Shown: positions 12,054-60,182, counted from the stretch's first letter. The stretch: 64,000 nt of DNA from Amphiscolops sp. MND2022 (GCA_964187785.1 OZ076413.1:66898001-66962000); one strand, 5' to 3'. The notes: generated by a model not told the origin, from the letters alone. Numbers and translations are program-made.

Positions 12054-12234
12054 TCAGGCGGCGGAAGCAGAATTGATGAGATCGGAGGCTATTTTGAGCA
12101 GTTCTTGATCGTCGCCGGTTGTGTCGTCGTCATCTGACTTGAATTTGCGACTGGTTTCGACCACAGTCGATGATTCAGTCTCCTCGCCATCTCTGATCAC
12201 CGTTCGTTTGATAACCTCTTTCTTCAGTACAACT
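12054..12234 (-). CDS. Host gene exon 6 (terminal coding exon): RVVLKKEVIKRTVIRDGEETESSTVVETSRKFKSDDDDTTGDDQELLKIASDLINSASAA*
   Basis: Acceptor TGTGTTGTTTGGTTGCAG. Phase 2, matching the donor at 21951. 181 nt = 1 + 60 codons including TGA. GC-rich relative to the flanks. Confidence 0.75.
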
Positions 12235-12468
12235 CTGCAACCAAACAACACAACTTGGCGACGGCTATTCTCAGTTGTGTATTATCAGGCTGAACCAAGG
12301 CTTTTAACCTTATTTTTGCTTTTTTGTAAGAAAAATATCAAAAAGTCCGGATAATGTTTTGCTGCAAGTGTCGGAACACTTTAGATACAATCCTCTAAGT
12401 ATTTAAGCTATATCAGTTTCTTCCGTTTGCACAGCAAGTTTTTTCAAGCATAAAAGTTGTTGTGAAAA

Positions 12469-13133
12469 AACATTATAGATGCCCTGTAAAATGACACTAT
12501 CTTTGAATAAGAGCTTGATTACCAGAAAACTCAACACAGAAAACTCAACACATTTTAAGTATTTAATAATCGTGATATATATTATACATCTATATTCCTT
12601 GTTCATACGGCTCATAATTTATGCATTTTTTCTAAAGTATTCGTGTTTGCGTTTAAACTTTTTCTATCGTTTTGTTTCATGGTTTGGGCCAAAGTTAACA
12701 ACGTTTCAACGTGAAAAACAGCTTAATATAGGAAAGAATCGCAATCATGACTAGGTGTAAAGGAAATTATACGTCTTTACATGTTTTTAAAATGAGTCGC
12801 CATTGTGACTAAGTGTAAACGGAAATAATACGGATTTAACAATTAGTTAGATTTCGGAAAATAAACTCAATTGAGGTGTTAACCAAAATTAATTGAATGT
12901 GTTGAAATGTGTTGAGTTTTCTGTGTTGAGTTTTCTGGTGTTGAGTTTTCTGTTTTTTACTTTGTGTTGAGTTTTCTGTGTTGAGTTTTCTTGTGTTGAG
13001 TTTTCATGTGTTGAGTTTTCATGTGTTGAGTTTTCATGTGTTGAGTTTTCCGTACCCCAAGAGCTTGATGGACCATGTTCCTTATAAGCTCTTATTCAAA
13101 GATAGTGTCATTTTACAGGGCATCTATAATGTT
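12469..13133. mobile_element. Small palindromic MITE-like element (48-bp perfect inverted repeats) split by an insertion
   Basis: 12469-12516 is the exact reverse complement of 13086-13133. Confidence 0.7.
12520..13058. mobile_element. Foldback/Mutator-like non-autonomous element with minisatellite-containing inverted termini
   Basis: GAAAACTCAACAC repeats at the left, many GTGTTGAGTTTTC repeats at the right ending CGTACCCC. Flanked by the 11-bp direct repeat AAGAGCTTGAT (12509-12519, 13059-13069). Confidence 0.6.
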
Positions 13134-13899
13134 CTCGGAAGGGTAGAGGCCTTAATCAACACAGTAAGTATTGAGGTTAAAAAGATGAAAGCTACCGCTC
13201 GTGTTCTTACACAGATAGTTTGAATTTTATTCAGTAACATCTTTATTACAAACCAAAATAAAGTCGAAAACCAATACCTTTTGATGAACCTAAATTCTGG
13301 AAAGAGTGAGTCGAATATTCGCATAAATATGAACAAAATTCAGAACCCGAAGAGGCCGTCACAAAATACACTTCAAGAAACGACGCTTTCAATCTTTCAG
13401 ACGCTTTTCCAACAACGGGCACACTGAGATAATTTTCATTACAAGATTATGAAAATAAACCTTCTTGAACAGGACATTTCAGACGAAAGAACTCGAATGC
13501 AATGTATGATAAGGCATAATGTTCAATTTTGAGACGACCCATATATAACTATAGTCTTTCTTCGAATTTTCTGTAAGCAAAACATTATAGTCATTAGTGA
13601 ATGGAGTAGTTTGTCAATGATACAAAAATGCAAAACTGGGTCTGAGAGGCATGTAAAGGTGAGGAAATTGCAGGACTTAGTGCAGAGATGACCCTATAAT
13701 CATTCAATATAGAATTTATTATAGCTTTTGCTATATATTAAAAATGAATAGAATTCTATTGTGAATCCAATTTTGATCAATCGCATGAATATAGCTTCAA
13801 TCCTTGCGCCCATTTGGGTAGTCAGCTAAAAAGAAAGCTGAAATTTTTTTGAAAAATTGAATTTTTTTGAAAAAAAAAACGAAACGTTGAAGACTATGA

Positions 13900-16160
13900 A
13901 AAACTAACTTTTGCGAAAGAATCGAGAATCTATCATAATCTATCCAAAGATTCAATTCTATTACAATACAAGCTGAACCTAGAACATTCGTTAGGATAAA
14001 CTGATTGAGAAAATATTGCTCTGGAAAAGGGCTTTCAAAAATTTGTCGAAACTTTTCTCAACACGAGCAAACAATTTGCGCCAATGAGTTATTCGTGAAC
14101 GCGAAAACAACTGGATCAAAAACAAAACTAAACGCGAACTTAATAGACGTGATCACTTGTTTGAAAGTTGGTTGAGAAATCCATCTAATCGAGCCGAATC
14201 ATTGAAATAAAAGACACAAAAAGGAATAGGGTCAAAAATTTGATAAAGCAGAAAATATATAAAAGCAGAGGAAGAGAGAATATGTACGAAGATCCTTTGA
14301 TAATTGTCGCGATTTGAAATCATTTCATCGCCAATTGAATTCGATAACTGGAAAGTAACGATGCTGTGTATCCAAGTTTTACGGGAACAACTAATATCGA
14401 TATGTTCAATGATTTTTACGTTAACGTTGGTCCCAATATGCACGAAGTTATCCCGACAGAAAACCCGATCAATTTGAAAAGTGAAGTTCAATCAATGTTT
14501 CTAGAACCGACTAATGAAACCGAATTGGCAACAGTGATGAACAAACTGAAAAATAAAACATCCACAGGGCCCTATGGTATATCGAATAAATTACTCGAAC
14601 TAGCAGTACCGGCAATAGTAGCGCCTCTTAATACTCTCATCAATAGATGTTTCAGTGAATCCTATTTTCCAGACATTCTCAAGCTAGCTAAAGTGATTCC
14701 AGTATATAAAAACGATGACCCCCATGAAATCTCAAATTATAGACCTATCTCTGTGGTGTCCCCTATTGGAAAGATTGTACTTTACAAAAGAATAATTAAC
14801 TACATCAACAAGTTTGATCTACTTCATCCGAACCAATTTGGATTCCGTAAAAAGCATAAAACAGTAGACGCACTTGCGTGTGTAATAGAACAATTACCGC
14901 TGTGTATTGATGCTAAAAAACCGGCTTGTTGTATTTTCCTTGATCTCTCTAAAGCATTCGATAGCATCCACCATGACATATTGCTGTCCAAATTATTAAA
15001 TTATGGTTTTCGAGGGCCAGTACATAACCTTCTAAAATCATTATTGACAAACAGAAGCCAAATCGTTCAAATCGGCTCCTGTAGATGGGAACTGAAACAA
15101 TTAGTATGCGGTGTGCCACAGGAGTGTGTTGTAGGTCCATTAAAGTTCATTTTATATGTCAACGATTTACCTGACTTTGTACAATCAAATAACACAATGT
15201 TTGCTGATGATACTAATCTTTATCAAGTATTGCCCTCCTTCAATCTGATGCGTTTCAAAGAGATGCGCAAAATTGAACACTGGATGAATGGTAACACTCA
15301 AGTGCAACGTTGACAAATCTAAAGCACTAGTCTTTGCTAGTAAGGTATCAACCGATCCTAGCTTTGGAGAGCTGAACATCAAAATCTTTAACGAGCCGGA
15401 AGTATCTGGGAATCATATTGGGCAATAATCTTTCGTTCAGTGAACACGTGGCAAAAATCAAAAGTAAAGTACTTTTTTCCAACTACGTTGTATGGAGGTC
15501 ACGTGAGTTAACTAGATCGCAGATGATTTTATTTTACAAGTTACATATCAACCCCTCAATTCAATATGGAGTACTAATTTATAGATGCCCGTCTTATTCA
15601 AAGCTGAGTCCTATTCTCACGATACAGAAGCGAATAATAAGAACAATGTTCTTTTTGCCGAAATAAGCGAGTGTCAGTGAAAATATGCTTCGAAATGAAC
15701 TTCCCACTGTTTATGAGCTACATGTTTATGAATTATTGAAATTGACTTTGAATTGTCTTAGAGGCGAACTCTCATCGGCCATCGAAAGATCTTTTGCGTC
15801 TTCAGAGTGCCAACTATAGTCTACGATCAGTTAAAAGACAAGATGCCACAGTTCCATTTGGAAATATGAAGTTAGAACAATCTCTGTCCAAGAGAATTCC
15901 CTTGTTTTATTATAGAGTCAATGCTGATGCTGTCCCATCATTGGATATAATCAAGGATATGAGCGAGGTTCATGTGAGTAATTTCAAACATGAGTTTTGT
16001 AGAACCTTCATTTTGGGCCACAGCGACTTCGTTCAATCAATATTTGGACTCTCAAAAGTTAAATAATAGCTGAATGATATGATAACGTGCTAATAACGCT
16101 CAGAATCTCTCTGTAGTAGTCACTGCAGCCTGAACCGGGCTTAACCAACCCCGCACCTGC
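13900..16160 (+). pseudogene. 5'- and 3'-truncated LINE ORF2 fragment (tether, RT, start of 3' UTR), same family as the 32-36.6 kb LINE
   Basis: Near-colinear with 33930-36200 (YPSFT.TTNID.FN.FYVNVGPNMHEVIP, MFADDTNLYQ). Contains frameshifts. Confidence 0.9.
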
Positions 16161-17467
16161 TGACACGGAAGAACACCAAGTACGAATGTTGCAAGTTTTG
16201 ACAAAAAAGGCCTTTCGACCATGTTGTTTTTGAAAAATTCGTAGGATGATGAGTCATTGTCAATATTCAAGAATTTATCAGGCTCAATACTGAATTCATT
16301 CATTGTGAGAGTTACATTATCGGCTACTTCCATGTTAAACGCCATTTCCAAGTCTGTTACTTCAGCTTCCTTGGTTTTTTCAACAGATACCATTTGGTGC
16401 CTATTTGCAAGTTGTTTCAAAAATAGCTCGGCTCTTTTTGCTTCATCTTAGCTTAGAACGTGCCAGTTTGGAGGGATTAAACAGGCCAGCTGCAAGCATC
16501 ACGTCAGAGAAAGATTTGACTCTTCTATCGTATTCCATTAAACTCAAAAGCATCACACAATTTCTTGCGACTTGATGAACAACATTGTCAGTTACAGGCT
16601 GTGAACTTTCGAATACTTTCCATACTTTCCACATGGACCTGAGTCTGGAAAGAACCGCATACATATCGTCAATTGCGTTTGGATCAAGTTCCGAATAGGC
16701 CGATTACGTTGCTTCTCGTGCACGTTTTACATCAGGCTTGCTTTTCGCTAAATATTCGATTTGATTGTAATGACAATACGAGCGCGTGTCACAGCGCGGG
16801 TCCCTTGAACACTTTGCAAAAACAGTTGGAATAATTTAGACCGTCTTGTAGCTTCAATAATAACGAGATTGAGTCGGTGGGCTCCGCAACCAACAAACTG
16901 GGGGCCCAAATCAATTTGTGAGTTTTCTTGGCGATGCGGTCCAACGTAAAAGCAATCCTCTTCTGTCTCCTCTCCGTCATCCAGTATATCTGGCCATATT
17001 GATCTTCTAAAGTTCAGACAAGCTGCTATCATCGCAATGCAGTTATCCGACTGGTAAGCGAGACACATTCGTGGATCGAGTTTAACAGACTTCAGGCATT
17101 CTTCCAGCTCTACGGTCGTAACAATTGCTCGGATAGATTCTACGCTTTTGAATTCAATCACTTGAGCTACTTGATTGAATTTTCATCGATAAAAGAAACC
17201 AAAATGATTAAATATGTATTTCGACTTGCATCCGTCCAATGATCAAGTTGAACTCCGTAATGAGTCGCCTTTTTCACTCGATCGAGGATCCTCTGTTTCA
17301 GTAATTTGGGTGGTTCCGTTAATATGGCGCATTGCACCGGTCGTGAAATTCACATCCATTACACGGAGTAAATCTTTGCAGCATAATTTACAGCGATAAT
17401 CTTTATTAGGCACTCTTAGAAACCCAGACATTAATTTAATTCTCTTGGGAGAACGCGGAGGCGACAT
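16160..17467 (-). pseudogene. hAT transposase relic, copy 1 (C-terminally truncated)
   Basis: BED finger YRCKLCC..TTGAMRH; AYQSDNC (catalytic-D region); CGAHRLNL (CxxH motif); start of the dimerization domain RPFLSKLATFVLGVLP. Confidence 0.8.
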
Positions 17468-17469
17468 GG

Positions 17470-19880
17470 CAAATCGTTCAAATTGGCTCCTGTAGATGGG
17501 AACTGAAACAATTAGTATGCGGTGTGCCACAGGAGTGTGTTGTAGGTCCATTAAAGTTCATTTTATATGTCAACGATTTACCTGACTTTGTACAATCAAA
17601 TAACACAATGTTTGCTGATGATACTAATCTTTATCAAGAATTGCCCTCCTTCAATCTGATGCGTTTCAAAGAGATGCGCAAAATTGAACACTGGATGAAT
17701 GGTAACACTCAAGTGCAACGTTGACAAATCTAAAGCACTAGTCTTTGCTAGTAAGGTATCAACCGATCCTAGCTTTGGAGAGCTGAGCATCAAAATCTCT
17801 AACGAGCCGGAAGTATCTGGGAATCATATTGGGCAATAATCTTTCGTTCAGTGAACACGTGGCAAAAATCAAAAGTAAAGTACTTTTTTCCAACTACGTT
17901 GTATGGAGGTCAGGTGAGTTAACTAGATAGCAGATGATTTTATTTTACAAGTTACATATCAACCCCTCAATTCAATATGGAGTACTAATTTATAGATGCC
18001 CGCCTTATTCAAAGCTGAGTCCTATTCTCACGATACAGAAGCGAATAATAAGAACAATGTTCTTTTTGCCGAAATAAGCGAGTGTCAGTGAAAATATGCT
18101 TCGAAATGAACTTCCCACTGTTTATGAGCTACATGTTTATGAATTATTGAAATTGACTTTGAATTGTCTTAGAGGCGAACTCTCATCGGCCATCGAAAGA
18201 TCTTTTGCGTTTTCAGAGTGCCAACTATAGTCTACGATCAGTAAAAAGACAAGATGCCACAGTTCCATTTGGAAATATGAAGTTAGAACAATCTCTGTCC
18301 AAGAGAATTCCCTCATTTTATTATAGACTCAATGCTGATGCTGTCCCATCATTGGATATAATCAAGGATATGAGCGAGGTTCATGTGAGTAATTTCAAAC
18401 ATGAGTTTTGTAGAACCTTCATTTTGGGCCACAGCGACTTCGTTCAATCAATATTTGGACTCTCAAAAGTTAAATAATAGCTGAATGATATGATAACGTG
18501 CTAATAACGCTCAGAATCTCCCTGTAGTAGTCACTGCAGCCTGAACCGGGCTTAACCAACCCCGCACCTGCTGACACGGAAGAACACCAAGTACGAATGT
18601 TGCAAGTTTTGACAAAAAAGGCCTTTCGACCATGTTGTTTTTGAAAAATTCGTAGGATGATGAGTCATTGTCAATATTCAAGAATTTATCAGGCTCAATA
18701 TTGAATTCATTCATTGTGAGAGTTACATTATCGGCTACTTCCATGTCAAACGCCATTTCCAAGTCTGTCACTTCAGCTTCCTTGGTTTTTTCAACAGATA
18801 CCATTTGGTGCCTATTTGCAAGTTGTTTCAAAAATAGCTCGGCTCTTTTTGCTTCATCTTAGCTTAGAACGTGCCAGTTTGGAGGGATTAAACAGGCCAG
18901 CTGCAAGCATCACGTCAGAGAAAGATTTGACTCTTCTATCGCATTCCATTAAACTCAAAAGCATCACACAATTTCTTGCGACTTGATGAACAACATTGTC
19001 ATTTACAGGCTGTGAACTTTCGAATACTTTCCATACTTTCCACATGGACCTGAGTCTGGAAAGAACCGCATACTTATCGTCAATTGCGTTTGGATCAAGT
19101 TCCGAATAGGCCGATTACGTTGCTTCTCGTGCACGTTGTACATCAGGCTTGCTTTTCGCTAAATATTCGATTTGATTGTAATGACAATACGAGCGCGTGT
19201 CACAGCGCGGGTCCCTTGAACACTTTGCAAAAACAGTTGGAATAATTTAGACCGTCTTGTAGCTTCAATAATAACGAGATTGAGTCGGTGGGCTCCGCAA
19301 CCAACAAACTGGGGGCCCAAATCAATTTGTGAGTTTTCTTGGCGATGCGGTCCAACGTAAAAGCAATCCTCTTCTGTCTCCTCTCCGTCATCCAGTATAT
19401 CTGGCCATATTGATCTTCTAAAGTTCAGACAAGCTGCTATCATCGCAATGCAGTTATCCGACTGGTAAGCGAGACACATTCGTGGATCGAGTTTAACGGA
19501 CTTCAGGCATTCTTCCAGCTCTACGGTCGTAACAATTGCTCGGATAGATTCTACGCTTTTGAATTCAATCACTTGAGCTACTTGATTGAATTTTCATCGA
19601 TAAAAGAAACCAAAATGATTAAATATGTATTTCGACTTGCATCCGTCCAATGATCAAGTTGAACTCCGTAATGAGTCGCCTTTTTCACTCGATCGAGGAT
19701 CCTCTGTTTCAGTAATTTGGGTGGTTCCGTTAATATGGCGCATTGCACCGGTCGTGAAATTCACATCCATTACACGGAGTAAATCTTTGCAGCATAATTT
19801 ACAGCGATAATCTTTATTAGGCACTCTTAGAAACCCAGACATTAATTTAATTCTCTTGGGAGAACGCGGAGGCGACATGG
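17470..19880. repeat. Second unit of a 2411-bp tandem duplication (first unit 15059-17469), containing LINE 3' part and hAT transposase copy 2 (ATG 19878)
   Basis: ORF pairs offset by exactly 2411 bp (16100/18511, 16748/19159, 17214/19625). Junction microhomology CAAAT at 15059, 17470 and 19881. Confidence 0.95.
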
Positions 19881-20388
19881 CAAATTAAATTCAATGTATG
19901 TTGATAGTCAATGTAAGTTGAAACGTCAATGGTATTTAACTGCTCGGTCAATTTGTAAAGCAGTCAATTACGTTAAACATCATTTGGATTACTCGATTAT
20001 GATTGGTCAATAATAGCGGCATCATAGAATTCTATTATAGAAATTCCAAATATGTTCATATTATAGCCGCTATAATAGTTGCTGCCGGTTTAATAACATA
20101 GCGTTTAATATAGCATTGCTATAATAGAATTTCGAGCTATGGTCATCTGTGACTTGGTGGTAATATACAAGTAATCGAAAGTGATTTAAGCAAGCTACAA
20201 AATAGTTTGCAAAACTGATTATGTAGTGCCTTTACAAATTGATTGATGTTTGTTGAAGCATTTTTTGATTACCTCCAAAACTCGGCGTTTCGAACAAAGA
20301 TGGGTTCAGTTCAATTTCAGTTTCTACAATAAGGGGTCCCATTCTTTTATTACAGTATGGTCCATATGATTTATACAGTCCTGTAATG

Positions 20389-20933
20389 AACAAGCTGGGA
20401 ACGGCCCAAGTCGGCGCCATATCTAAGGCTCAAAAATAGCAAACGGACTTCAATGTGTCAAGTATTCTCTTCTACAGTACCCGCTTGAGGAAAAAATTGA
20501 AAAATAATTCCAATTTATTTTGATTTTTTATTTTGGATTTTTTCGATTTTTTTTTGGTCTCCGGTAAGTCGCATAGTGCCGAAAAATGTAAAAGGGGGGC
20601 CTTTGGGAGTTTTTGAACATCCATTGTTTTGCAAAATAGGAAAAAAATGAAGGGGGGCCTTTGGAGACATTCAAAAAATTTGCGAAAAAAAGTCTCACAA
20701 AGCCGAAAAAACCTGCACAAAAATATTTTGGTCATGGGCGGGACTCGAACCCACGTCCTTCTGCTTGGCAGACATCAAAAACTATCCTAATTAACCTCTA
20801 TGCTAAGTGGCAGTAGAAGTTACAAGTGTGGCAGTTAGTGGACGCAGCTTATAAAGCTTATGAAATCTGTCAGTTCGTTGGTCTTAAAAAAGTCACTACT
20901 ATAGTCTGCGTTTTTCTACGAAAAGCGCCGACT
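20389..20933. mobile_element. Helentron/DINE-1-like non-autonomous element containing a tRNA-like cassette; partial second copy at about 21338-21640
   Basis: Starts AACAAGCTGGGAACGGCCCAAGTCGGCGC. Sub-terminal inverted repeat AGTCGGCGC (20409) / GCGCCGACT (20925). Terminal hairpin GCGTTTTTC-TAC-GAAAAGCGC. Shared blocks with 21338-21640. Confidence 0.5.
20730..20812 (-). other. tRNA-derived (Gly-GCC-like) pseudo-tRNA / SINE-type head
   Basis: On the minus strand: A box TAGCATAGAGG, loop CTGCCAA, T-arm GTGGG-TTCGAGT-CCCGC with B box. The cloverleaf is imperfect. Confidence 0.5.
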
Positions 20934-21950
20934 AAAAAATGGAACCCCTGTTCGACAATAAAGTTTGCAACGCTTGATAATTTCCCTAATATCTCAAAAA
21001 CGATCAATTTTTCCTAAACATGATAGATTAAAAAGTTTCTCTAGTATACATTCCTCTTTAAATTTGGAAGTCCTAGCATTAGTACGAGACAAGTTTGCAA
21101 AGAACAATTTTTAGACGTAAAATTTTGCAAATCCAGTTGATGAGTCTAAATTAAAAGCAAAAGCTAGTCATTAATTACTTTTCTACATTGTTCAAGATGC
21201 CCATCATTGACTAATCAAACTCAAAATTTTTGAGCTCCCTAGTGTTAACATGTAAAAAGGTTATAACAAATTCGAGGTCTTAGTTCTATACTGATAATAA
21301 TCTTAATCCATGTGCTGGAAATTTCTTCAAAGTGGAAGGACTTCAAAGTGTCAAGTATTCTCTTCTACAGTACCCGCATGAGGAAAAAATTGAAAAAATC
21401 TCATTTTTTTTCGAAGTTTTCTTCAAAATTTTTTTGGTCTCCGATAAGTCGCATAGTGCCAAAAAATGTAAAAGAGACCTCAAAAAAGCCTAATTAACCT
21501 CTATTTCAAGTGCCAGTAGAAGTAGTGTGGCATTTAGTGTTAGTTCAAGTCAGCTTATAAAGCTTATAAAATCTGTCAGTTCGTTGGTCTCAAAAAAAGT
21601 CACTACTATAGTCTGCGTTTTTCTACGAAAAGCGCCGACTAAAAAACCCAATCAAAATTGTTTCTAAAACACGATAATCGAAAACTTGATTGCAGAAAAA
21701 ATTTTAATCCTTATACATAGATAGGTGTTATAGACTTAATTACGCAATATTTGTCATAAAGTTCCAACCAAACACGAATGCGAACTAGATTGAATTTCAA
21801 GAAACTTCCAACAACTACATTCTCATGATGATCGATAGTTTGAGATATTAGCAGAGAAAAAGACTTCCAAACAATATTATCACAAAGGGGTACCATTCTT
21901 TATCACAAGACTATGTGTAGTAGAATATGTGAGGTAATTACAATAATCAC

Positions 21951-22106
21951 CTTCTGGTGGCTGTTTTGACGAGGTGCTCCGTGTCCACTTCTTGGCTGAA
22001 GGGAGAGTCTGCGATGGCCTGTTCGATCAGCTTGCCCGTGTCCTCGGTCTCAGCCCCGTCGTACACAAACTCCTTCCGGTTGCCATCGGGATCCACTCTG
22101 ATGATC
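21951..22106 (-). CDS. Host gene exon 5: (R)IIRVDPDGNRKEFVYDGAETEDTGKLIEQAIADSPFSQEVDTEHLVKTATR
   Basis: Acceptor GTTGTGTTGGTAG, donor AAG|GTGATT. 156 nt, phase 2-2, open frame, GC-rich. Confidence 0.75.
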
Positions 22107-22676
22107 CTACCAACACAACAACCACACTTCTATTGTCTTTATTTGTTATTGATTCAAGTTTCTCGGGCTCGTTTGAAGAGCAACAGCCATTCAATTAAAG
22201 ACTGTTGATAAACAATCCATTGCTATTTTTAGTTTATTTACCAACAAGTACCTGGTTTTGCATTAAAAGCTAGATACCATTATAGTAAACTTTGAGCTAC
22301 AGTAAACGTTACTCTTTTATCTCTTTTCCTTGACAAGCTATTCTATCAGAATGCTATATGGCGCAGTCAGCAATTTGAACTTCAAATTAAAGAATTCGAA
22401 GAGCGAAATTGTGAAATGGAAAGTTAAGAGAACAACACAGCGGGAGAAACAAGCAATAGCCGAATACTCCCGAACAATTCAACGATGAGATCAGTAGAAC
22501 GGACATAAACACGAAAGCTGCCCATTCCGATCCTGTCTGCAACTGCGACAAATTCAAAACGTTTATTCCTTTCGACGAACTTTTACAGGTTTCTCAAATT
22601 AAACCTCATGTTAGTTTTTTTCTCAAAAGAAACACTATCCTAGTATGTTTCAGAGAAAACATTCAACAGCATCTGT

Positions 22677-23098
22677 TGTTGCAGCAGCAAGGTCGTTAAT
22701 TCAAAGTGAGCAAATAACAAGGCCAAATAGCTCAGTTTGTTAGAGCACCTGTTTGTTAGAGTCTCGGGACCATAAGATCGCTGGTTCGATTCCCCGAAGG
22801 TTCAACATAATTGATGTATTTCGATGAAAATGTGAACTTTTTACCTTTAAATACCTCAAAATAACCTTGAAAATATTGCATAAAAAGGTCTTGCTATCTT
22901 GTTTATCGTTGTTTAATGTTGTTGACATAAATTTATTAATTATTATTGCTCTTTTGCCTGTCAAAGGCATAATTTTGAACATGGTAAAGAAGACATTTGC
23001 CTCGTTTTATAGCCGATATCAAAGGTATCCAAAAACATTGTTTGGATCGTCTCGTTTCTTAGAAGGAACATTAGAAGCCGAATTCTAAAGTTCTTTCA
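22677..23098 (+). repeat. 5' LTR (422 bp)
   Basis: TGTTGCAGCAGCAA...AAGTTCTTTCA; similar to the 3' LTR with scattered substitutions and small indels. Confidence 0.92.
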
Positions 23099-23120
23099 TG
23101 GTGGCCATAGAGAGGCTCGA
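23099..23120 (+). promoter_or_regulatory. Primer-binding site
   Basis: TGGTGGCCATAGAGAGGCTCGA directly after the LTR. The reverse complement reads as a tRNA 3' end: TCGAGC-CTCTC-TATGGCC-A-CCA. Confidence 0.8.
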
Positions 23121-50110: not shown

Positions 50111-53100
50111 CAGACTGAGAGAAGGCAGGCCGGTAGTTCTTCACATCCTTTTTGCTCCATCAAATCATGCTCAAGAGAATCTGAGATACTCATTCACCGA
50201 CTCATTTCTGGTCATTGTAGTTTAAATGGCAATTCAATTAATAATTTAAATGGCAATTTAAAATGTCTTGTACAAGATCTGGAAAGCCGAATCTCCGAAA
50301 TGTACGTGCGGATACAACGAAGAAACTGTCGAACATTACCTCTGCAATTGTATATATTACTCTGAGCAACAAAAGAAGTGGAGATTAGATGGCTCCCTCC
50401 AAAACGCTCTGCACTTCCCTAATCTGGAACAGTATATCATTGAAACTGGTAGGTTCAATTCTCAAGAGACCCAGAAGAACATGAGCTTGAATTAAACTTT
50501 GTGTAGCTGCTCACAGAGAGGAGCTTTTTAAAGAAATATATAAATCTACATTATTATTATTAAGGCTTCGCAGCATGTGCTGCATTATGATACATATGCC
50601 GCAACGAACTAGCAAGATCTTTGGAGTTCGAATACTTTGGAGCAGACTGAGAGAAGGGTAACAGGCCGGTAGTTCTTCACATCCTTTTTGCTCCATCAAA
50701 TCATGCTCAAGAGAATCTGAGATACACATTTACCGACTCATTTCTGGTCATTGTAGTTTAAATGGCAATTCAATTAATAATTCAAATGGCAATTTAAAAT
50801 GTCTTGTACAAGATCTGGAAAGCCTGAGACTGAGAGAAGGGTAACAGGCCGGTAGTTCTTCACATCCTTTTTGCTTCCGTCTGTGAGAATTGGTGAATCT
50901 ACACCGTGCTTCCACGAAGAAGGGAATTTTGAGTCTTTTCAGGTTGCTGAAGATCGTAAAAAGTGAATGGCTTATATTGTTAGCTGTCTTTTTCATTACT
51001 ATTGGAGGTAATTCGTCTGGTCCCCGACTTTTATTAATCCTTAGTACATTTAATTCCTTGATAATGTGTCTTCTTTTGTGAATGCCAAATCAATAGGACC
51101 AAAATTGGTGAGATCACTTGGCTGATAACTGGTATATATTAAATAGTTTCATTAAATATCAAAACTTATTAAATAGTTTCATGTTGATATGACGAGAGAC
51201 GGACAGAGATGCAATAGTGAAAGTTTGGAATGTGGACGATGCAGAAACTGGTTTCATCTAGGCTGTGTAGGGGTTCCTGCAGCTGTCTTGACTCATCAAG
51301 CGAAGGTGCCTCTATTGGAATTGCAGTCATTGTCAACAAAATTCCGGTGAGATTGTTCCTAATACTGTTTGTGATTCGATAGATGCAAAATTGAGCGAAC
51401 CGATCGAAAAGATGAAGAGTATTTGTTCCGATATTCTAGCAATAAAGGAATCTATTAGAAATCAAGAAAGTGTCCTAAAAACTGAAGTTGTTGAGATAAA
51501 AGATTCAGTAAAAAGCAAACATGCCGACTTTGAAAAGCGCATCAATGATAATGATAAGACAACCTATTCGATAGTCATTCCTACTCACGTTGTGTACCAA
51601 AATTCTTTACTGGTTTCCACGTTTCTCCTAATTACGCTCAATGATCACAATCCGCGATTTCTGATTACGCTGTGCATCACAATTCGCGATGAACACAATG
51701 CACTGTTTGACTAGAATACGGTTCAATCTCGTTTTTCGGAAAATACACTTCACACTTGATGATAAATTCCACTTTTGCGGCGTATGTATCGTTGTGCAGG
51801 GATTGCTCCCTAAATAGTCCAGGGCCTCTGACGACAGTTTGTACAAATACAAGTCCAACTACATGAATTTGATTCAGACCAGTGAGTATTGAAGTATTTC
51901 CACATCATATCTGGAAGGCTTGGTTTCAGTCGGGTTGGGTTATAGAAATCCATGTGTTTCCGGATAACGTTGGTTCTGAAGGCAGTCCGGTACCGGAAGT
52001 CTTGTCGTTGCATTTCATATTTGATAGTCGGAAGAACAATTCTTTTCCATCTTGAGTCGTTGACTGTAATGTAATAAGCATGCGGGAAGACATCATAGTC
52101 GTCGTTCAGTATCTTACTGAAGAGGAAAAGGTCTTTTGGAACCTGGAAATATAAAGGGGGCAGTAAGTTGTTTTTCAGGAGAGAATCGCGGTAACTTAAT
52201 CCAGGGCTTACCCGACGCAAAACTTTACGGTTAAAATTTTCAATTAAGTGCGCATTTGACTTATTAGCAGACCAACATTCAGATGCATATACTAGAGTAG
52301 GATTGATGTTCGATCTATAGAGGCAGCTTTTTGATTCAGATGATAGTAAGTTTGAAGGGTTTCTTCTGAGGAGAAATAAAACTGAGCGCCTTGTTAACTC
52401 TGGTTGTAACGTGTTCTGTCCAGTCGAGATTTTCATGTATGATCAAACCAAGGTGTCTTGCCGAGCTAGTGGGTCTGATGGGTTCTGTTCCGAGTGAAAA
52501 CGTCGTGTTGGTGATTCTAGATTTGTTCCTCTTTGTTTGTACTTTGTACTCTATGAACTCGCATTTCTTGGCATTGAAATACAAGAAGTTTGCCTCGCTC
52601 CAAATATGTAAGCTGTTTATGTCCTCCTTTAGTTTATTGATGTCATGAGTGAAGGCATGGTCATGTACTTTGCAAATAAGTTTGAGGTCGTCCGCGAAAA
52701 GAAGTGCAAGTGAGAAAAACACGTTGTCTGGCAGGTCATTAATGTAAAAGATGAAAAGTAACGGCCCGAGTATCGAACCTTGTGGGACGCCTGTGATGAT
52801 GCCCTTGGAAAAAATGGAGACATTAATCTTCACGGATTGAGTGCGATTTAGTAGTAGTAGAATAAGATTTAGAGCAACAGCTCAAGGGTTTCCACCCAAT
52901 TATCAGTCCGGTCTCAAATTGTCGTAAGCTTGGTCATGGTCTTACAGTTTCCGCATCTGCAGAGAATTTTCCAGGTACATTTGTCGGTCTGTTAGTAGCG
53001 TTTGTTGAAGAAATTCCAATAGATTCGAGTCTGCGGTTTTCGCGGGCCTTGCTCCTTTCAATGCTTTCAGTACGTTGTTGTAGAGGATCATTGTTCTTTG

Positions 53101-54339
53101 GAAGAATTCCTTGTCACTTTTTGTAAGTCTATTTCGCTTTACAGAAAACTTACTGCTTGTCTTTTCGTTCGGGCAGGTTCATTTTCACGTTCTAATTCAT
53201 AGTCGAATTTGTTTTCGATAAAGTCTATTAGCATTAGCAGGTCGTGCATTTCCATGTAGTGACACCATGGTAGCAGTCGGAGGGCACAGTCTTTCTTTGC
53301 ATTCGATGTTTGAGGATAAGATCCACTTTGTAGCTTTTTTTCTGTATGCTCTCTAGTTGCTCCATATTTTTGTTTGGCATCCAGGCTAGTGAGGCATACG
53401 TGAGTATTGGGACTACATAGCCCGTGTAGGCATTTAACCTTGTTGTCCAGTGAGATTTCTGACTCAGATTCCTTTTGAGTAGGTAAAGAGCATTCATTCC
53501 TTTAGTGCAACGCTTTCCACAGTTTTCGTTAGTCAGTTTACGGTAGTCAGTACTTGGTTTCCTTGGAGATTTGCTGTAAGATTTCCCTTAAAGTTCATGA
53601 TTTTCACGTCTTTATGTTAACGGCCATTTTATTATGGTTTAGCCAAGTTGAGCAGTTGCGTTGTCGAGCTGTTGCTGGTCTCCAATAATGATCTTGTAGT
53701 CATCTGCGTAGCCGAAACTGTCTACTTCTGGCATTGTTTCGGGAAGATCATCTATGAAGATCAGGAACAACAATGGCCCCAGTATTGACCCTTGAGGCAC
53801 TCCACTAGTCACAGTTTGTTTAGTAGATTCATGATTGTTTATTTTGAAAAAATGTACACGGTCTGTCAAGTAAGAAGCAATTAATTTCAAAAGATTTCCA
53901 CCTGCTCCAAAAAGTGCGACCTTTCTCAGGAGCAGTTCATGTACCACGGTATCGAAGGCTTTTGCAAATTCCAAGTTAAAGCACTGTCAGTTCTTTTTGC
54001 TTTTCGTTGTCATTTAGTTCATATAGTTTGTCCAGGAAGACTAGTAGCTGTTGAAAACTAGTAGACTATTTGAACGGTAGTCAGCCAAAGTAGGTACAGT
54101 TTCCTTGATGCACTAAGACTGATGAGTTTACGTAGTAAAACAGTTTGATCTTGACGAATGCCTTCGAAAAATCAAATGAAAAAGACAAGATTGTACTTCT
54201 GGAGTCACTAATCGAGGAGTAAATGTAGGTGAGACTGCGGATAAGCTGCAAGATTGCGGACTTTCTTGGTAAAAAGCCGAACTGAGAGTCACTGGTTGTA
54301 CTCATAAAGTGACCGGCCAGGCAGTTGAAAAGAAGTTTC

Positions 54340-55640
54340 TCGAATACTTTGGAGCAGACTGAGAGAAGGGTAGTTACAGGCCGGTAGTTCTTCACATCCT
54401 TTTTGCTCCATCAAATCATGCTCAAGAGAATCTGAGATACTCATTCACCGACTCATTTCTGGTCATTGTAGTTTAAATGGCAATTCAATTAATAATTTAA
54501 CTGGCAATTTAAAATGTCTTGTACAAGATCTGGAAAGCCGAATCTCCGAAATGTACGTGCGGATACAACGAAGAAACTGTCGAACATTACCTCTGCAATT
54601 GTATATATTACTCTGAGCAACAAAAGAAGTGGAGATTAGAAGGCTCCCTCCAAAACGCTCTGCAATTCCCTAATCTGGAACAGTATATCATTGAAACTGG
54701 TAGGTTCAATTCTCAAGAGACCCAGAAGAACATGAGCTTGAATTAAACTTTGTGTAGCTGCTCACAAAGAGGAGCTTTTTAAAGAAATATATAATTCTAC
54801 ATTATTATTATTAAGGCTTCGCAGCATGTGCTGCATTATGATACATATGCCGCAACGAACTAGCAAGATCTTTGGAGTTCGAATACTTTGGAGCAGACTG
54901 AGAGAAGGGTAACAGGCCGGTAGTTCTTCACATCCTTTTTGCTCCATCAAATCATGCTCAAGAGAATCTGAGATACTCATTCACCGACTCATTTCTGGTC
55001 ATTGTAGTTTAAATGGCAATTCAATTAATAATTTAAATGGCAATTTAAAATGTCTTGTACAAGATCTGGAAAGCCGAATCTCCGAAATGTACGTGCGGAT
55101 ACAACGAAGAAACTGTCGAACATTACCTCTGCAATTGTATATATTACTCTGAGCAACAAAAGAAGTGGAGATTAGAAGGCTCCCTCCAAAACGCTCTGCA
55201 ATTCCCTAATCTGGAACAGTATATCATTGAAACTGGTAGGTTCAATTCTCAAGAGACCCAGAAGAACATGAGCTTGAATTAAACTTTGTGTAGCTGCTCA
55301 CAAAGAGGAGCTTTTTAAAGAAATATATAATTCTACATTATTATTATTAAGGCTTCGCAGCATGTGCTGCATTATGATACATATGCCGCAACGAACTAGC
55401 AAGATCTTTGGAGTTCGAATACTTTGGAGCAGACTGAGAGAAGGGTAACAGGCCGGTAGTTCTTCACATCCTTTTTGCTCCATCAAATCATGCTCAAGAG
55501 AATCTGAGATACACATTTACCGACTCATTTCTGGTCATTGTAGTTTAAATGGCAATTCAATTAATAATTCAAATGGCAATTTAAAATGTCTTGTACAAGA
55601 TCTGGAAAGCCTGAGACTGAGAGAAGGGTAACAGGCCGGT
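54340..55640. repeat. About 2.4 copies of a chimeric 536-bp unit (inverted RT snippet + I-group LINE 3' end)
   Basis: Identical ORFs at 54519 and 55055; GGAGCAGACTG at 54351, 54890 and 55426. Confidence 0.9.
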
Positions 55641-58600
55641 AGTTCTTCACATCCTTTTTGCTTCCGTCTTTGAGAATTGGTGAATCTACACCGTGCTTCC
55701 ACGAAGAAGGGAATTTTGAGTCTTTTCAGGTTGCTGAAGATCGTAAAAAGTGAATGGCTTATATTGTTAGCTGTCTTTTTCATTACTATTGGAGGTAATT
55801 CGTCTGGTCCCCGACTTTTATTAATCCTTAGTACATTTAATTCCTTGATAATGTGTCTTCTTTTGTGAATGCCAAATCAATAGGACCAAAATTGGTGAGA
55901 TCACTTGGCTGATAACTGGTATATATTAAATAGTTTCATTAAATATTAAAACTTATTAAAAAGTTTCATGTTGATATGACGAGAGACGGACAGAGATGCA
56001 AGAGTGAAAGTTTGGAATGTGGACGATGCAGAAACTGGTTTCATCTAGGCTGTGTAGGGGTTCCTGCAGCTGTCTTGACTCATCAAGCGAAGGTGCCTCT
56101 ATTGGAATTGCAGTCATTGTCAACAAAATTCCGGTGAGATTGTTCCTAATACTGTTTGTGATTCGATAGATGCAAAATTGAGCGAACCGATCGAAAAGAT
56201 GAAGAGTATTTGTTCCGATATTCTAGCAATAAAGGAATCTATTAGAAATCAAGAAAGTGTCCTAAAAACTGAAGTTGTTGAGATAAAAGATTCAGTAAAA
56301 AGCAAACATGCCGACTTTGAAAAGCGCATCAATGATAATGATAGGACAACCTATTCGATAGTTTCTCAACAAACTAGAATCGATGGTATTGCTGAAGTCG
56401 AAGGTGCAAGGGAAGCCACTACAACCGAAAAGAAGCAAGTGAATTCAATTCGTTCTAGACTAGGTGTACAACAAGCGATCACAAACATGAAACGACTTGG
56501 AAAATGCAATGCACAAAAACGTCCTCGTACAATTCTAGTAAGGTGTTGCAATGCCTGGGATGCAAGATTTTTATCAGCAAAGGCTCATTTACTGAAGGAC
56601 CTTGACGAAGCTGTATTATTCTCGAAAGCTTTATCGACCCAAGAGATTGAAATTGAAAACAAAATCTTGAAGAGCCATGAGCTGATAGAATCAGGCATCG
56701 ATCCTACTGAATTGAAAATACGTTCATTGAAACTTTATCACAAGGGTGAGCAAGTGAACAATGAAAATTCCAGCAATTAACTAATGTCACAGAACGATTT
56801 CACGCTTAACCTAGTTTGTGCAAATCTAAGAAGTTTTATTGCGAAAGAAAAGCGCAATGCTCTAGAACGGGCTACTCTAACGTCTAAAGCAAACGTTTTT
56901 GCATTTTCTGAAACATGGTGGCCTAATTTGTTTGAAGATAACGAGCTGTCATTACCAGGTTTTCACTTATATCGGAGAGAGAGACCAACCGAAAGGAAGA
57001 CAAAACATCGTGGCGTAATGATTGCAGTTAGTAATTCCATAAGGCACCAACCTCTCGACATAATTGACGAATACGACAGTGGCTTGTACAATATATATTG
57101 CCAACGAGACGTATCATTTGATATCCTTTTATAACCCTCCATATGACAGCAGCAATTATGTTTGGCCGATCAACAAATGGAAGAAATTCTTTAACAGTAG
57201 AAAACTTGGCTACCTCTGGAAATGTTATTGCTCTCGGTGATGCTAATCTGCCTAAAGTTAATTATGGATTCTTTAATGATTATGAAGCTGATGTTCTCAA
57301 CCTCATAAATGACACAAGGATGGATCAAATTGTTAATTTCAAGACATCAACTTCTACTCTGGACATTGTATTTGTCAACTTCCCTGTGATCAACATTGAA
57401 AGGGACTATAAATTCGATGATTCTTATTCTCTTAATGGAAAACACGCGTCTAATCACTATTCACTGAGCATCGAGATACCGTGGAACTATGAGGGCAGAT
57501 TTAATATTCCCAGTTTTTATTTCAGTTTTTTCCGGGCAAATTTTGACTGTATGAATGATCTTATTTTACTGTAGCCCTTTATTGGTTACTGCTGGACCAA
57601 TCCGGACGTTTGAAGTCTGTCTCGAGCACTCCTCAAATATGTGAAAGTTTCAACAAACATTTCCAGTCAGTTTTTACTACGCCTTCAGGTCTAACTAATA
57701 TCTATGGTTGTGAAAACTTTTTACTCAATGATTACGATATTAGTCTTGAAAAAATATCGAATATTATGCAACGCCTAGATGTCAGCAAATCTAAAGGACA
57801 TGACTGTCTACCTCCTGTTCTTTTTAAACGCATGGATACTATGAAAACTTCGATATACGGCTTATTTCGCACGATAAAACGAACTTGTACATTTCCAAGG
57901 TTCTGGAAAATTGGTAAAGTAAAGCCCCTTTTCAAAAAAGGTAATCGGGCTCTTGTCACCAACTACAGACCAATCACACTTTTGTGCATTCTATCGAAGA
58001 TTTTCGAAAAATGTATTTTCGACAGCATGTACAGTTTTGCTGCTCCGTTATTACATTCATCACAGTTTGGGTTTACGAAAGGAAAGTCGACACTTAATCA
58101 ATTAATATGTTATTTAGATGGAATTTACAAGAACGTGCAAATAAACGACATCTGCGTCGAAACCTTATACTTTGATTTTGAAAAAGCATTCGACAAAATT
58201 GATCATGCCTGATTCTGATCATGATTCTGATAGAGAAGCTCAAGTCAATTGGAGTCTATGGGAAGTTATTGAATATATTAAGAAGTTACTTGAGTGACCG
58301 AAAACAATTTGTTGAAATCAATGGGTATAAGTCCTCTTTGTTGAACGTATCCAGCGGTGTGCCTCAGGGATCAATTCTCGGTCCCATATTATTTCTCATA
58401 TATATCATGGATTTGCCTTGTGGGATGATGTCGTCTTTTTATTGTTTCGCTGACGATTCCAAGATGCTATCTATTCATGGTCAATAAGAGATCTGTGTGT
58501 TACCTCAGGACGTTATGCTACTTGAACAATGGTGAAATAAGAACAATATGGTGTTGAATAAATGCCACATGCCGATAAATGCCACATGCTATCATTTTCT

Positions 58601-58770
58601 AAGTACCACTGTGACATTGGATTTACCGATTGTCCAATCGAATGATCAAGTTTTGAAAAGGACTTAGGTGTCATTATATCATCTGACCTTTCATGGAACA
58701 TCCAAATTGCTAATGCATGTAGAAAAGGTATCCAGTCTCTTCAAGTACTTAAGCCTTCTCGCAAGTACTA
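55620..58770 (+). mobile_element. CR1-type LINE with PHD-finger ORF1, decayed, 3'-truncated; its 5' part is duplicated at about 50820-51575
   Basis: PHD relic LECGRCRNWFHLGCVG..YWNCSHC; ORF1 56178-56780 (RLGK..RPRTILV); APE (ANLRS, FSETW, GDANLP); RT ([31 protein letters not shown]). Confidence 0.85.
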
Positions 58771-59330
58771 CTCGCCTTCACTACGATATATAGGGTCGCA
58801 AACAATGCTGCAGAAATGTTTGTTGAACATCTCAGCCTTATCTATGTCTGTCTCGGCATGTGCTGTGCCGTTTGTGATGGAGGGCGGGTATTGGTCACCC
58901 TTGAGGTACTTAAAGACGGCATGCTTGTTTCGGGTACTAGCAAGTTTGGACTCATAATTCACCCTGTCAGCTTTTTGTAGATCCTCGCAGTGCTTCGACA
59001 TATCTTCGAGTTTCTTTTTCTGGAGATCTGTCTTGAGATACCTCTTGTTCAGTGAATTTCTGTAAGTTGATAGTTTGTTAATAAAGTGCACCGTGGGTGG
59101 GGTAATCCATGGTTGGATGTTTTGTCGCTTGATTGTTCTCCTTGGTGTGTGTTGAGAGATCAAATCAAAGAACCACTCGTACCATACCGCGACGTGAACG
59201 TCTGGATTGCTATAGCAGATGGGATGAGCCCATGTCATTTTCTGTACAGTTTCAGACTCAGAGAATATGTGATGACGGTTTGTGAAAATCAAGGACAGCC
59301 TGTTATCTTCATCGCTGAATTATTAGATGT
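58768..59330 (-). pseudogene. LINE ORF2 tether-region fragment
   Basis: YSNPDV..WYEWF..HTPRRT..QPWIT..KAEMFNKHF, typical of the segment between APE and RT. Confidence 0.7.
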
Positions 59331-59428
59331 GATTAATGGATAGTTAACGAATTAACAGAACAGTCGAGGCTTTTCTTCGATTGCGTTAAGCGAAATTTCC
59401 GAAGCAACTAATCCATTCACTCCGACTA

Positions 59429-59600
59429 CAGTTGAATCGCCCTAATTCGTATCGCTACGGACCGAATGAAATTAGCACGAATAATGAGAAATACGAAGTA
59501 AGCGAATGATTTAACTTTGGTCCGAAATAGGGGTCTGAGATACATGCGAACTGAACGAAGATCCGAGTTATCCGGATACGAATTAACCGGAGTAAAACTA
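59429..59600. mobile_element. Tc1/mariner-type MITE, about 170 bp
   Basis: TA|CAGTTGAATCGCCCTAATTCGTATC ... GATACGAATTAACCGGAGTAAAACTA|TA. Confidence 0.7.
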
Positions 59601-59966
59601 TATTCAGAAAAAATGAACGATTACGGTCCAGTCTGAAATGCAAGTTTTTCGATGACACGGCAATTCGGGAATCTGCTAACAATATTGAGGAGCTTAATTG
59701 GTCGCTTGAATATGTTTGGGGTCAAGAGACTCTACACAGAAGCCGTTACAGAAGGTATATAAAATTTAACATTGGAAGACAGATTGATAGCCATACTTCG
59801 CCTAAATAAACCGAAGAAACAGTTGCATTAACTCCATGTGTTTTTCCATCTATCTTAACCGACACACTCCTTCTGTACTATGGGCAAATTCAAGCTAATC
59901 AGCAAAACTAATTTGTGGTTTCATTACGCACGGTCCTGTTTTTAATTTCATGTAATTTCAACTCAC

Positions 59967-60182
59967 CTGAACTTTGCGATGATAATACTCGTGGCAGCAG
60001 CAGCCGCAACAACAGCCCTTGTGACAACAGCAACATCTGCAACACTTGGGCACATTGCACAAACAGCAAACGCAACATCTCCACAAAAAGGCCAACCTGC
60101 GTCTGACACTGGCAGTTGAACTGTTAATACTGCTACTCACACTCGGGAGACGTGCTCGTTTTCTTATTTCCTCCACTTCCAT
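59967..60182 (-). CDS. Host gene exon 1 (putative first coding exon) encoding a cysteine string: MEVEEIRKRARLPSVSSSINSSTASVRRRLAFLWRCCVCCLCNVPKCCRCCCCHKGCCCGCCCHEYYHRKVQ
   Basis: Consensus donor CAG|GTGAGT, phase 0, matching exon 2. An in-frame TAA lies upstream of the ATG. 216 nt. Confidence 0.65.

What the first reader, a model, noticed from the sequence alone, without database searches (positions are those of the whole stretch)
12054..60182. Hidden six-exon host gene spanning 48 kb of transposons: cysteine string + death domain + ankyrin-like tail
Six GC-rich minus-strand islands join by GT-AG splicing with matching phases 0,1,2,2,2 (exons 60182-59967, 43827-43482, 42949-42664, 37355-37143, 22106-21951, 12234-12054). 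The result is one 1398-nt frame (465 aa); introns are 16.1, 0.5, 5.3, 15.0 and 9.7 kb. The ORF track shows only disconnected pieces. The architecture is Cys string, linker, death domain, S/P-rich and acidic linker, and a basic beta-like tail. I do not recognise this combination. It parallels the short membrane-anchored ankyrin isoforms that use an internal first exon (vertebrate sAnk1 uses a transmembrane exon). The splice sites and frame are seen in the sequence; the ankyrin relationship is inference.
Basis: partly seen in the sequence, partly recalled or inferred. Interest (0 to 1): 0.8.

Follow-up and report, generated by a model that had tools for sequence, protein, structure and literature searches.

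The report
Real cysteine-string gene, not ankyrin
The six scattered pieces do form one real, conserved animal gene, stretched to 48 kb by transposons in its introns; it encodes an uncharacterised protein with an N-terminal cysteine string, and neither a death domain nor an ankyrin link could be shown.

Summary
All six minus-strand exons have AG/GT borders and phases 0,1,2,2,2. They join into one 1398-nt frame of 465 aa, and the exons are GC-rich islands (0.49-0.58 against 0.33-0.38). Relatives support every junction. An intron-free contig from another species (L001) carries one 611-aa ORF with the same order of parts: Cys string, helical domain, linker, acidic run, basic tail. Genomic contigs of four other species share introns 1, 2 and 5 and read straight through the places of introns 3 and 4. 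The introns hold LINE and BEL/Pao elements.

The cysteine string is real and is the best-conserved part. The death domain is not supported: Pfam finds nothing in the window, one ortholog scores 12.9 bits against a cut-off of 22.6, no solved structure matches by sequence, and a moderate AlphaFold model matches no death fold. No ankyrin homology or ankyrin exon was found.

The best reading is a stand-alone gene of an unnamed, narrowly distributed animal family, probably a palmitoyl-anchored, largely disordered adaptor. No RNA data exist for this species. Interest is modest.

The parts
59967..60182 (-). Exon 1 (216 nt, ATG, ends in phase 0): Ser-rich stretch, LAFLW, and a cysteine string with 18 Cys in 28 residues, then HEYYHRKVQ
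   Evidence: ATG start, donor CAG|GTGAGT; 76% identity over 72 aa to the L001 ORF, E=2e-33. In L001 the sequence runs straight on into the exon-2 homolog. L005 has the same phase-0 intron place.
43482..43827 (-). Exon 2 (346 nt, phase 0 to 1): short linker plus a small helical domain (PWSYIVMKCITPQWQDAATRLGMEKFVN...DELMKLW)
   Evidence: 72% identity to P0001 (E=8e-39) and 42% to P0002; the L002 ortholog has a donor at the same place; the homolog models as 5 helices with core pLDDT 70-88.
42664..42949 (-). Exon 3 (286 nt, phase 1 to 2): end of the helical region, then an S/P-rich disordered linker
   Evidence: aligned without a gap at either border to the fused L002 exon 10513-11139 (50% identity over residues 188-406). 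Four of the six exonic SNPs lie here: three synonymous and one V>L.
37143..37355 (-). Exon 4 (213 nt, phase 2 to 2): linker, acidic Ser/Glu run, start of the conserved motif TTKRVT|R
   Evidence: The donor splits the Arg codon inside the motif K(K/R)(I/V)TRIIR(V/L)DP, which is unbroken in L001-L005.
21951..22106 (-). Exon 5 (156 nt, phase 2 to 2): conserved motif IIRVDPDGNRKEFVYDGAETEDTGKLIEQAIADSPF...VKTATR
   Evidence: 55-69% identity to five relatives. The exon 5/6 border is conserved: gene calls in L004, L005 and L003 run into the intron right after KT.RR.
12054..12234 (-). Exon 6 (181 nt, ends with TGA): invariant VVLKKEV(I/V)KRTVI.DG, acidic end
   Evidence: Possible poly(A) signals lie 675 and 968 nt downstream.
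43828..59966 (-). Intron 1 (16139 nt) with LINE RT remains and duplicated ORFs
   Evidence: RVT_1 at 47570-48592 and 52336-52833. Same intron place in L005, where it is 88 nt long.
42950..43481 (-). Intron 2 (532 nt) with a very high-copy short repeat near 43142-43423
   Evidence: word depth up to about 130,000 against 20-65 beside it. The intron place is shared with L002, L004 and L005.
37356..42663 (-). Intron 3 (5308 nt), absent in relatives; holds 100% identical direct repeats
22107..37142 (-). Intron 4 (15036 nt), absent in relatives; holds a BEL/Pao LTR element (about 24.5-30.1 kb) and a LINE (about 32.1-36.1 kb), both antisense to the gene
   Evidence: Peptidase_A17, Integrase_H2C2, rve and RVT_1; Exo_endo_phos plus RVT_1. 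Searches show the intron is missing in relatives.
12235..21950 (-). Intron 5 (9716 nt) with a LINE RT fragment at 14366-15313
   Evidence: The intron place is conserved in L002-L005.

Best explanation
This is a genuine, intact protein-coding gene of an animal genome. It has six exons on the minus strand, and its introns have been inflated by LINE and BEL/Pao retrotransposons to 48 kb. The orthologous gene in a compact relative spans about 3.4 kb. It encodes a 465-aa member of a conserved but unnamed family seen here in six species, with no Pfam family for any part. Shown: the exon structure, the conservation, and the order of parts. That order is a Ser-rich N-terminus, LAFLW plus a string of 18 Cys in 28 residues, a helical domain of about 80 residues, a poorly conserved S/P-rich linker, a Ser/Glu acidic run, and two nearly invariant basic motifs (TRIIRVDP.G.RKEFVY.G and RRVVLKKEV.KRTVI.DG). 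Inferred, at about 55%: the cysteine string is S-palmitoylated, as in cysteine-string protein. This would fasten the N-terminus to the cytosolic face of a membrane. The helical domain and the basic C-terminal motifs would then act as partner-binding sites, held on a long disordered linker rich in SP/TP and acidic Ser clusters that look phosphorylatable. It is not demonstrably a death-domain protein or an ankyrin isoform.
For: Gene model: borders, frame; GC islands, tight open frames. Homology to every exon. Junction 1: L001 has one ORF through ...HEYYHRKTQ|TEG..., and L005 has an 88-nt GT-AG intron at that same place. Junctions 2 and 5: introns at the same places in L002, L004 and L005, and unbroken sequence in L001. 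Junctions 3 and 4: unbroken, ungapped sequence in L002, L004, L005 and L003. L001 lacks introns at three places where genomic relatives have them, and it carries 5' and 3' UTRs, so it is most likely a spliced transcript. Selection: dN is 0.17-0.41 with saturated dS against L002, and 5 of 6 exonic SNPs are synonymous. The Cys-string exon is the best-conserved part, at 76%. No Pfam family at E<=1 on any piece or on the full homolog, apart from noise. Stand-alone gene: in-frame stop 14 codons before the start codon in L001; compact gene in L005 with only LINE remains upstream.
Against: There is no RNA evidence from this species; the four runs found are DNA-like. Palmitoylation is inferred from composition alone. 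The conserved His residues in the string (CCCCHK, CCCHEYYH) would also fit metal binding. The databases searched hold few annotated animal proteins, so 'unnamed family' may reflect the databases; an annotated ortholog may exist in NCBI or UniProt. The window ends 3.8 kb upstream of exon 1, so upstream exons that splice into the phase-0 acceptor of exon 2 cannot be excluded. The fold model rests on five sequences (mean pLDDT 66).
Confidence: 0.72

Rival explanations
1. The gene is the 3' end of an ankyrin gene. The Cys-string exon is an internal alternative first exon, as the transmembrane exon is in vertebrate sAnk1. It would produce a short membrane-anchored isoform that keeps the ankyrin death domain and C-terminal regulatory tail.
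For: Exon 2 starts in phase 0, so an upstream phase-0 exon could join it. One ortholog gives a sub-threshold Pfam Death match (E=0.12, 12.9 bits, profile positions 13-59 of 86). The homolog's domain models as 5 helices. From my own memory only, not tested: the tail's acidic run followed by alternating basic and hydrophobic residues, and an EQFTD stretch in L001, recall the vertebrate small-ankyrin-1 tail.
Against: Pfam finds no Death domain in the window pieces or in four other orthologs. No PDB chain matches at E<=10, although PDB holds many death domains. No death fold appears among Foldseek or VIA matches. No ankyrin appears among phmmer hits in 1.84 billion representatives. L001 has its own 5' UTR and an in-frame stop. 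In L005 the Cys exon lies 88 nt from exon 2, with no ANK/ZU5/Death hit on any called gene in about 17 kb upstream. None is seen in 10 kb upstream in L002 or L004, or in window 60183-64000.
Confidence: 0.06
2. Same gene, different chemistry. The Cys/His-rich N-terminal cluster is a metal-binding (Zn, Cu or Fe-S; metallothionein-like) or redox module, not a lipid anchor.
For: His residues inside the cluster are conserved between distant relatives: CCCCHK and CCCHEYYH in the window, L001 and L005.
Against: Runs of adjacent Cys next to a short hydrophobic stretch (LAFLW) and basic residues are typical of multiply palmitoylated anchors (established knowledge of cysteine-string protein; not tested here). 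No metal-binding Pfam family matched. The weak PDB matches to Cys-rich chains are noise (E=3 and 9.9).
Confidence: 0.15
3. The locus is a decaying or non-expressed copy in this species. The open frame survives by chance or recency, and the huge transposon-filled introns prevent proper splicing.
For: No RNA run was found. Donor 2 (GTTCCT) is weak. A motif kept in three relatives (SNRNSxLRKEFFG) is missing here.
Against: The frame is intact across six exons with canonical sites. The closest relative L002 also lacks that motif. Five of six SNPs are synonymous. dS is saturated while the motifs stay invariant. Introns of 10-16 kb are ordinary in large animal genomes.
Confidence: 0.05

Closest known systems
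Cysteine-string protein (CSP / DNAJC5)
   Same: A dense string of cysteines (18 in 28 residues here) next to hydrophobic and basic residues. In CSP such a string is multiply palmitoylated and anchors the protein to vesicle membranes (established knowledge).
   Different: There is no J domain and no other Pfam hit. The string is N-terminal rather than central. No sequence homology was detected. The resemblance is functional, not membership.
Ankyrin short isoforms (vertebrate small ankyrin 1) and the ankyrin death domain plus regulatory tail
   Same: The concept of a short isoform anchored by a special first exon. A helical region is followed by an acidic run and a basic tail. A weak Death signal appears in one ortholog (E=0.12).
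   Different: No ANK, ZU5, UPA or Death family reaches threshold. No ankyrin appears among sequence or fold matches. The related transcript and the compact ortholog look like a stand-alone gene.
Unnamed orthologs P0001, P0002/P0009, P0004/P0005, P0006 and loci L001-L005
   Same: The same exon order, the same motifs, and shared intron places 1, 2 and 5.
   Different: In the relatives exons 3-5 are fused and the introns are short where seen. The L001/L004/L005 group carries an extra SNRNSxLRKEFFG motif and a LIKQLEREFAEM end that the window lacks. None carries a telling name: one 55-aa fragment is called 'hypothetical protein', the rest have no name.

Membership tests
Death domain (Pfam PF00531, death fold) | Sequence match to the Death profile at or above the gathering score (22.6 bits) | tested here: not met
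   Window pieces: no family at E<=1. P0002: none. P0001: 12.9 bits, E=0.12. Five orthologous domain pieces: no Death match at E<=10. In the window the region is split by intron 2, but the unbroken homolog P0002 also fails.
Death domain (Pfam PF00531, death fold) | Six-helix death fold | tested here: inconclusive
   AlphaFold2 on a 5-sequence alignment gives mean pLDDT 65.7, core 70-88, with 5 helices. The first run with a poorer alignment gave pLDDT 46. Foldseek against PDB: best E=4.9. VIA-align wide: best Z=3.7, with no death-fold chain in the top 50. AFDB clusters and Swiss-Prot: best E about 1-2.6. Nothing supports a death fold, but the model is only moderate.
Death domain (Pfam PF00531, death fold) | Detectable similarity to any solved death domain sequence | tested here: not met
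   phmmer of the 611-aa homolog and hmmsearch with profiles A6 and A8 against 177,635 PDB sequences found no death-domain chain at E<=10.
Ankyrin (ANK repeats, ZU5-ZU5-UPA, death domain, regulatory tail) | ANK, ZU5 or UPA exons in the same transcript or just upstream on the same strand | tested here: not met
   L001 transcript: own 5' UTR with an in-frame stop before the start codon. Window 60183-64000: only short ORFs, one of them transposon-like. L002, L004, L005 and L007: no such Pfam hit on called genes 10-17 kb upstream. Sequence beyond base 64000 could not be seen.
Ankyrin (ANK repeats, ZU5-ZU5-UPA, death domain, regulatory tail) | Homology of the C-terminal tail to ankyrin regulatory domains | not testable with these tools
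   Pfam has no match for the tail. The length window of the word-indexed search excludes full-length ankyrins. I had no tool-derived ankyrin tail sequence to compare, and the recalled resemblance to small ankyrin 1 is memory only.
Cysteine-string protein (DNAJC5) | J domain N-terminal of the cysteine string | tested here: not met
   No DnaJ or any other Pfam hit on exon 1, exon 2 or the homolog.
Cysteine-string protein (DNAJC5) | Dense cysteine string that is palmitoylated | not testable with these tools
   The string is present and conserved: 18 Cys in 28 residues, and exon 1 is 76% identical to L001. Acylation needs an experiment.
Spliced protein-coding gene | Canonical splice sites, one open frame, cross-species conservation across every junction | tested here: met
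   Spliced RNA in this species itself was not available.

The most novel reading that the evidence does not exclude
The gene founds a so far undescribed, taxonomically narrow animal protein family. It would combine an N-terminal polycysteine membrane anchor, a small helical domain with no detectable fold relative, and two invariant basic C-terminal motifs. In this lineage the gene has also acquired two new introns (3 and 4) in its disordered linker, which transposons have since inflated.
Probability: 0.35. Interest if true: 0.4.

Novelty: new member of a known kind. Interest (0 to 1): 0.27.

Why it matters
For annotation, a prokaryote-style ORF track sees only fragments here, whereas comparative evidence recovers a complete gene spread over 48 kb. 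It is a clear case of intron inflation by retrotransposons: the same phase-0 intron is 88 nt in a relative and 16.1 kb here. For biology, the protein is a conserved but unnamed candidate for a lipid-anchored adaptor. Its cysteine string is its most conserved part, so the anchor is probably central to its function. The family could be a tractable model for polycysteine anchoring outside CSP. The more exciting claim, a new membrane-anchored ankyrin or death-domain isoform, is not borne out.

Tried and rejected
1. Pfam on each exon piece, on the homolog and on the tails of six species gave nothing above noise.
2. The ESM Atlas feature search, run three times, gave best scores of 0.44-0.66. These are in the noise range; a 4.1-CTD cluster at 0.50 was not confirmed by Pfam.
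3. PDB sequence searches with one sequence and two profiles gave nothing relevant.
4. The word-indexed protein search was run three times: whole homolog, tail region, and Cys-string region. It returned only unnamed orthologs or nothing.
5. The metagenome contig scan with the tail motif found one more ortholog, L003.
6. RNA evidence: the four runs listed under 'rna' turned out DNA-like, with flat depth, contigs crossing exon-intron borders, and no joint at 43482/42949. So the single read-laying run gave polymorphism and repeat depth but no splicing evidence.
7. An internal repeat between the two basic motifs, suggested by a MAFFT alignment, was rejected by hhalign at probability 1.5%.
8. An 'introner' origin of introns 3 and 4: their ends share no sequence with each other or with other places in the window.
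9. Rfam and tRNA scans of the window were empty.
10. A paper search for the sample accessions and for an ankyrin, palmitoylation and first-exon precedent found nothing useful.
12. I did not submit the joined 465-aa protein to any tool that needs typed letters. All searches used exon references or the unbroken homolog.
Full report
OBSERVATION. Their lengths are 216, 346, 286, 213, 156 and 181 nt. Each internal exon is preceded by AG, and each donor is followed by GT (GTGAGT, GTTCCT, GTTAGT, GTAATA, GTGATT). Cumulative phases are 0,1,2,2,2,0. The join is one 1398-nt frame from ATG to TGA, 465 aa, with no internal stop. Introns measure 16139, 532, 5308, 15036 and 9716 nt. The exons are GC islands (0.49-0.58 against 0.33-0.38 in the flanks), and the open frame around each exon ends within 6-66 nt of the proposed borders. 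The introns hold LINE elements (Exo_endo_phos plus RVT_1) and a BEL/Pao LTR element (Peptidase_A17, integrase), mostly antisense to the gene.

IS IT A REAL GENE? An unrestricted phmmer of the exon-2 piece against 1.84 billion representative proteins gave two true relatives. P0001 is a 106-aa read-through of the orthologous exon in a closer species (72% identity, E=8e-39). P0002 is a 515-aa protein (42% over the domain, E=4e-7) that also contains the tail encoded by window exons 4-6. P0002 sits on a 2690-nt Logan contig, L001. In L001 the frame is open from an upstream ATG, giving a 611-aa ORF (nt 257-2092) that begins with the same cysteine string as window exon 1. That ORF has an in-frame stop 14 codons before its start codon and about 600 nt of 3' UTR. 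tblastn of this ORF on the window hits exons 1, 2, 4, 5 and 6 (E = 2e-33, 3e-11, 6e-5, 2e-12, 2e-6) and nothing else of note.

I then fetched genomic contigs of other relatives: L002, L003, L004 and L005.

- In L002, exon 2 is followed by an intron of about 210 nt at the same codon position. A single exon then aligns collinearly and without a gap at the junction places to window exons 3+4+5 (residues 188-406, 50% identity, E=5e-45). An intron and exon 6 follow.
- L004, L005 and L003 likewise read straight through the places of window introns 3 and 4. Their gene calls break right after KT.RR, where window intron 5 lies.
- In L005 the Cys-string exon ends ...HRKVQ|GTTTGT and exon 2 starts after TTTCAG, 88 nt later. 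This is the same phase-0 place as the 16.1-kb window intron 1.

Every one of the five junctions is therefore supported by unbroken sequence in at least one relative. Three intron places are shared. Junction 4 falls inside an Arg codon in the middle of the invariant motif K(K/R)(I/V)TRIIR(V/L)DP, and the proposed splice restores that motif exactly.

L001 lacks introns at three places where genomic relatives have them, so it is most likely a spliced transcript. It shows the Cys string and the tail on one mRNA in a relative.

Selection is evident. dN against L002 is 0.17-0.41 while dS is saturated. Of six exonic differences among four DNA runs of this organism, five are synonymous and one is V>L.

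One thing is missing: RNA from this species. The four runs returned by the run search hold exon and intron alike at flat depth, and their contigs cross exon-intron borders. They are DNA, and they show no joint at the intron-2 borders.

WHAT THE PROTEIN IS. The parts, in order:

1. A Ser-rich N-terminus (SVSSSINSSTASVRRR), then LAFLW and a string CCVCCLCNVPKCCRCCCCHKGCCCGCCC (18 Cys in 28 residues), then HEYYHRKVQ. This is the best-conserved part of the protein (76% to L001).
2. A region of about 80 residues with invariant W, C, WQ..A...GME.F and DEL positions.
3. A poorly conserved S/P-rich linker.
4. A Ser/Glu acidic run.
5. Two nearly invariant basic motifs, TRIIRVDP.G.RKEFVY.G..E..DT.KLIE.A.AD.P and RRVVLKKEV.KRTVI.DG.

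No part reaches any Pfam family.

THE DEATH DOMAIN CLAIM. Pfam Death is absent from the window pieces. It appears only as a sub-threshold match in one ortholog (12.9 bits against a cut-off of 22.6, E=0.12), and in none of the five aligned domain pieces. The region is split by intron 2 in the window, but the unbroken homolog P0002 fails too. Searches of all PDB sequences with the homolog and with two family profiles found no death-domain chain at E<=10.

A first AlphaFold run was unreliable (pLDDT 46). A second run, on a cleaner five-species alignment, gave mean pLDDT 65.7 with a core at 70-88 and five helices. That model has no meaningful match:

- Foldseek against PDB: best E=4.9.
- VIA-align over 48,161 representative chains: best Z=3.7, with no death-fold entry among the top 50.
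- AFDB clusters and Swiss-Prot: best E about 1-2.6.

The death-domain label is thus unsupported. Given the shallow alignment, I call the fold test inconclusive rather than a disproof.

THE ANKYRIN CLAIM. No ankyrin appeared in any sequence or fold search. The related transcript has its own start. In L005 the whole gene fits in about 3.4 kb: a small first coding exon, the Cys exon, exon 2, the fused exon 3-5 and exon 6. Only LINE remains lie in the next 17 kb or so upstream. No ANK, ZU5 or Death hit lies on called genes upstream in L002 or L004, and window 60183-64000 shows only short, partly transposon-like ORFs. From memory I see a loose resemblance between the tail and the small-ankyrin-1 tail. 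I could not test it, because no tool gave me an ankyrin tail sequence, and I count it only as a lead. I put the ankyrin-isoform reading at about 6%.

MECHANISM. Shown: an intact, conserved, selected gene. Inferred: the cysteine string is a multiply S-palmitoylated membrane anchor, working like that of cysteine-string protein (about 55%). The conserved His residues leave a metal-binding alternative at about 15%. The helical domain and the basic C-terminal motifs would be binding sites, carried on a long disordered and probably phosphorylated linker.

NOVELTY AND SCORE. The gene itself is an ordinary, well-behaved animal gene, though a good example of transposon-driven intron growth. Its family carried no telling name and no Pfam domain in anything I could search. 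Those libraries are poor in annotated animal proteomes, so I cannot claim that the family is unknown to NCBI or UniProt. The striking part of the original interpretation does not hold. Interest 0.27.

Noticed in passing
window 37356-42663 and 22107-37142; L002:10513-11139, L004:9992-10870, L005:10001-11209, L003:~330-833: Introns 3 and 4 of the window gene are absent in all four relatives with genomic sequence; each has one fused exon there. Intron 4 sits at a CAG|G site inside an invariant motif. Two gains in this lineage and two losses elsewhere are equally parsimonious.
   Followed up: partly
window 43828-59966 versus L005:9056-9143: The same phase-0 intron (after ...HRKVQ) is 16139 nt here and 88 nt in a relative. 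The whole gene spans 48.1 kb here against about 3.4 kb there.
   Followed up: yes
window about 43142-43423 (intron 2): A short stretch has assembler word depth up to about 130,000, against 20-65 in the flanks, in all four DNA runs. Many loose ends sit at 43218-43277. This points to a very high-copy short repeat, possibly a SINE or MITE fragment. It has no Rfam or tRNA match.
   Followed up: partly
window 38271-41398 (intron 3): Direct repeats at 98-100% identity (300 nt in 3 copies, all identical; 186 nt in 3 copies, one at 98%), with alternating spacing of 1278 and 567 nt and twin 189-aa ORFs (38532-39101, 40377-40946) without a Pfam hit. This is either a recent tandem duplication or an assembly artefact.
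   Followed up: no
L001 ORF residues about 245-275; L004:~10200; P0006 residues 80-105: The motif SNRNSxLRK(E/D)FFG..SD(E/D)E is conserved in three relatives but missing from the window and from its closest relative L002. Those three relatives also share a C-terminal LIKQLEREFAEM that the window lacks.
   Followed up: partly
window 24505-30126: A BEL/Pao LTR retrotransposon with long open frames (Peptidase_A17, integrase, RT) in a block of GC 0.46-0.50, well above the 0.33-0.42 typical of the rest of the window. It is antisense to the gene and possibly young.
   Followed up: no
window 47570-48592 and 51810-52833 (minus strand); 56178-56780 and 57610-58212 (plus strand): Intron 1 holds pairs of near-duplicate ORFs. 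One pair carries RT fragments in the same orientation as the gene; the other pair is two 200-aa ORFs without a Pfam hit.
   Followed up: no
window 42743, 42767, 42858, 42864, 43684, 43783: Six exonic single-base differences among the four DNA runs of one sample. Five are synonymous and one changes V257 to L.
   Followed up: yes
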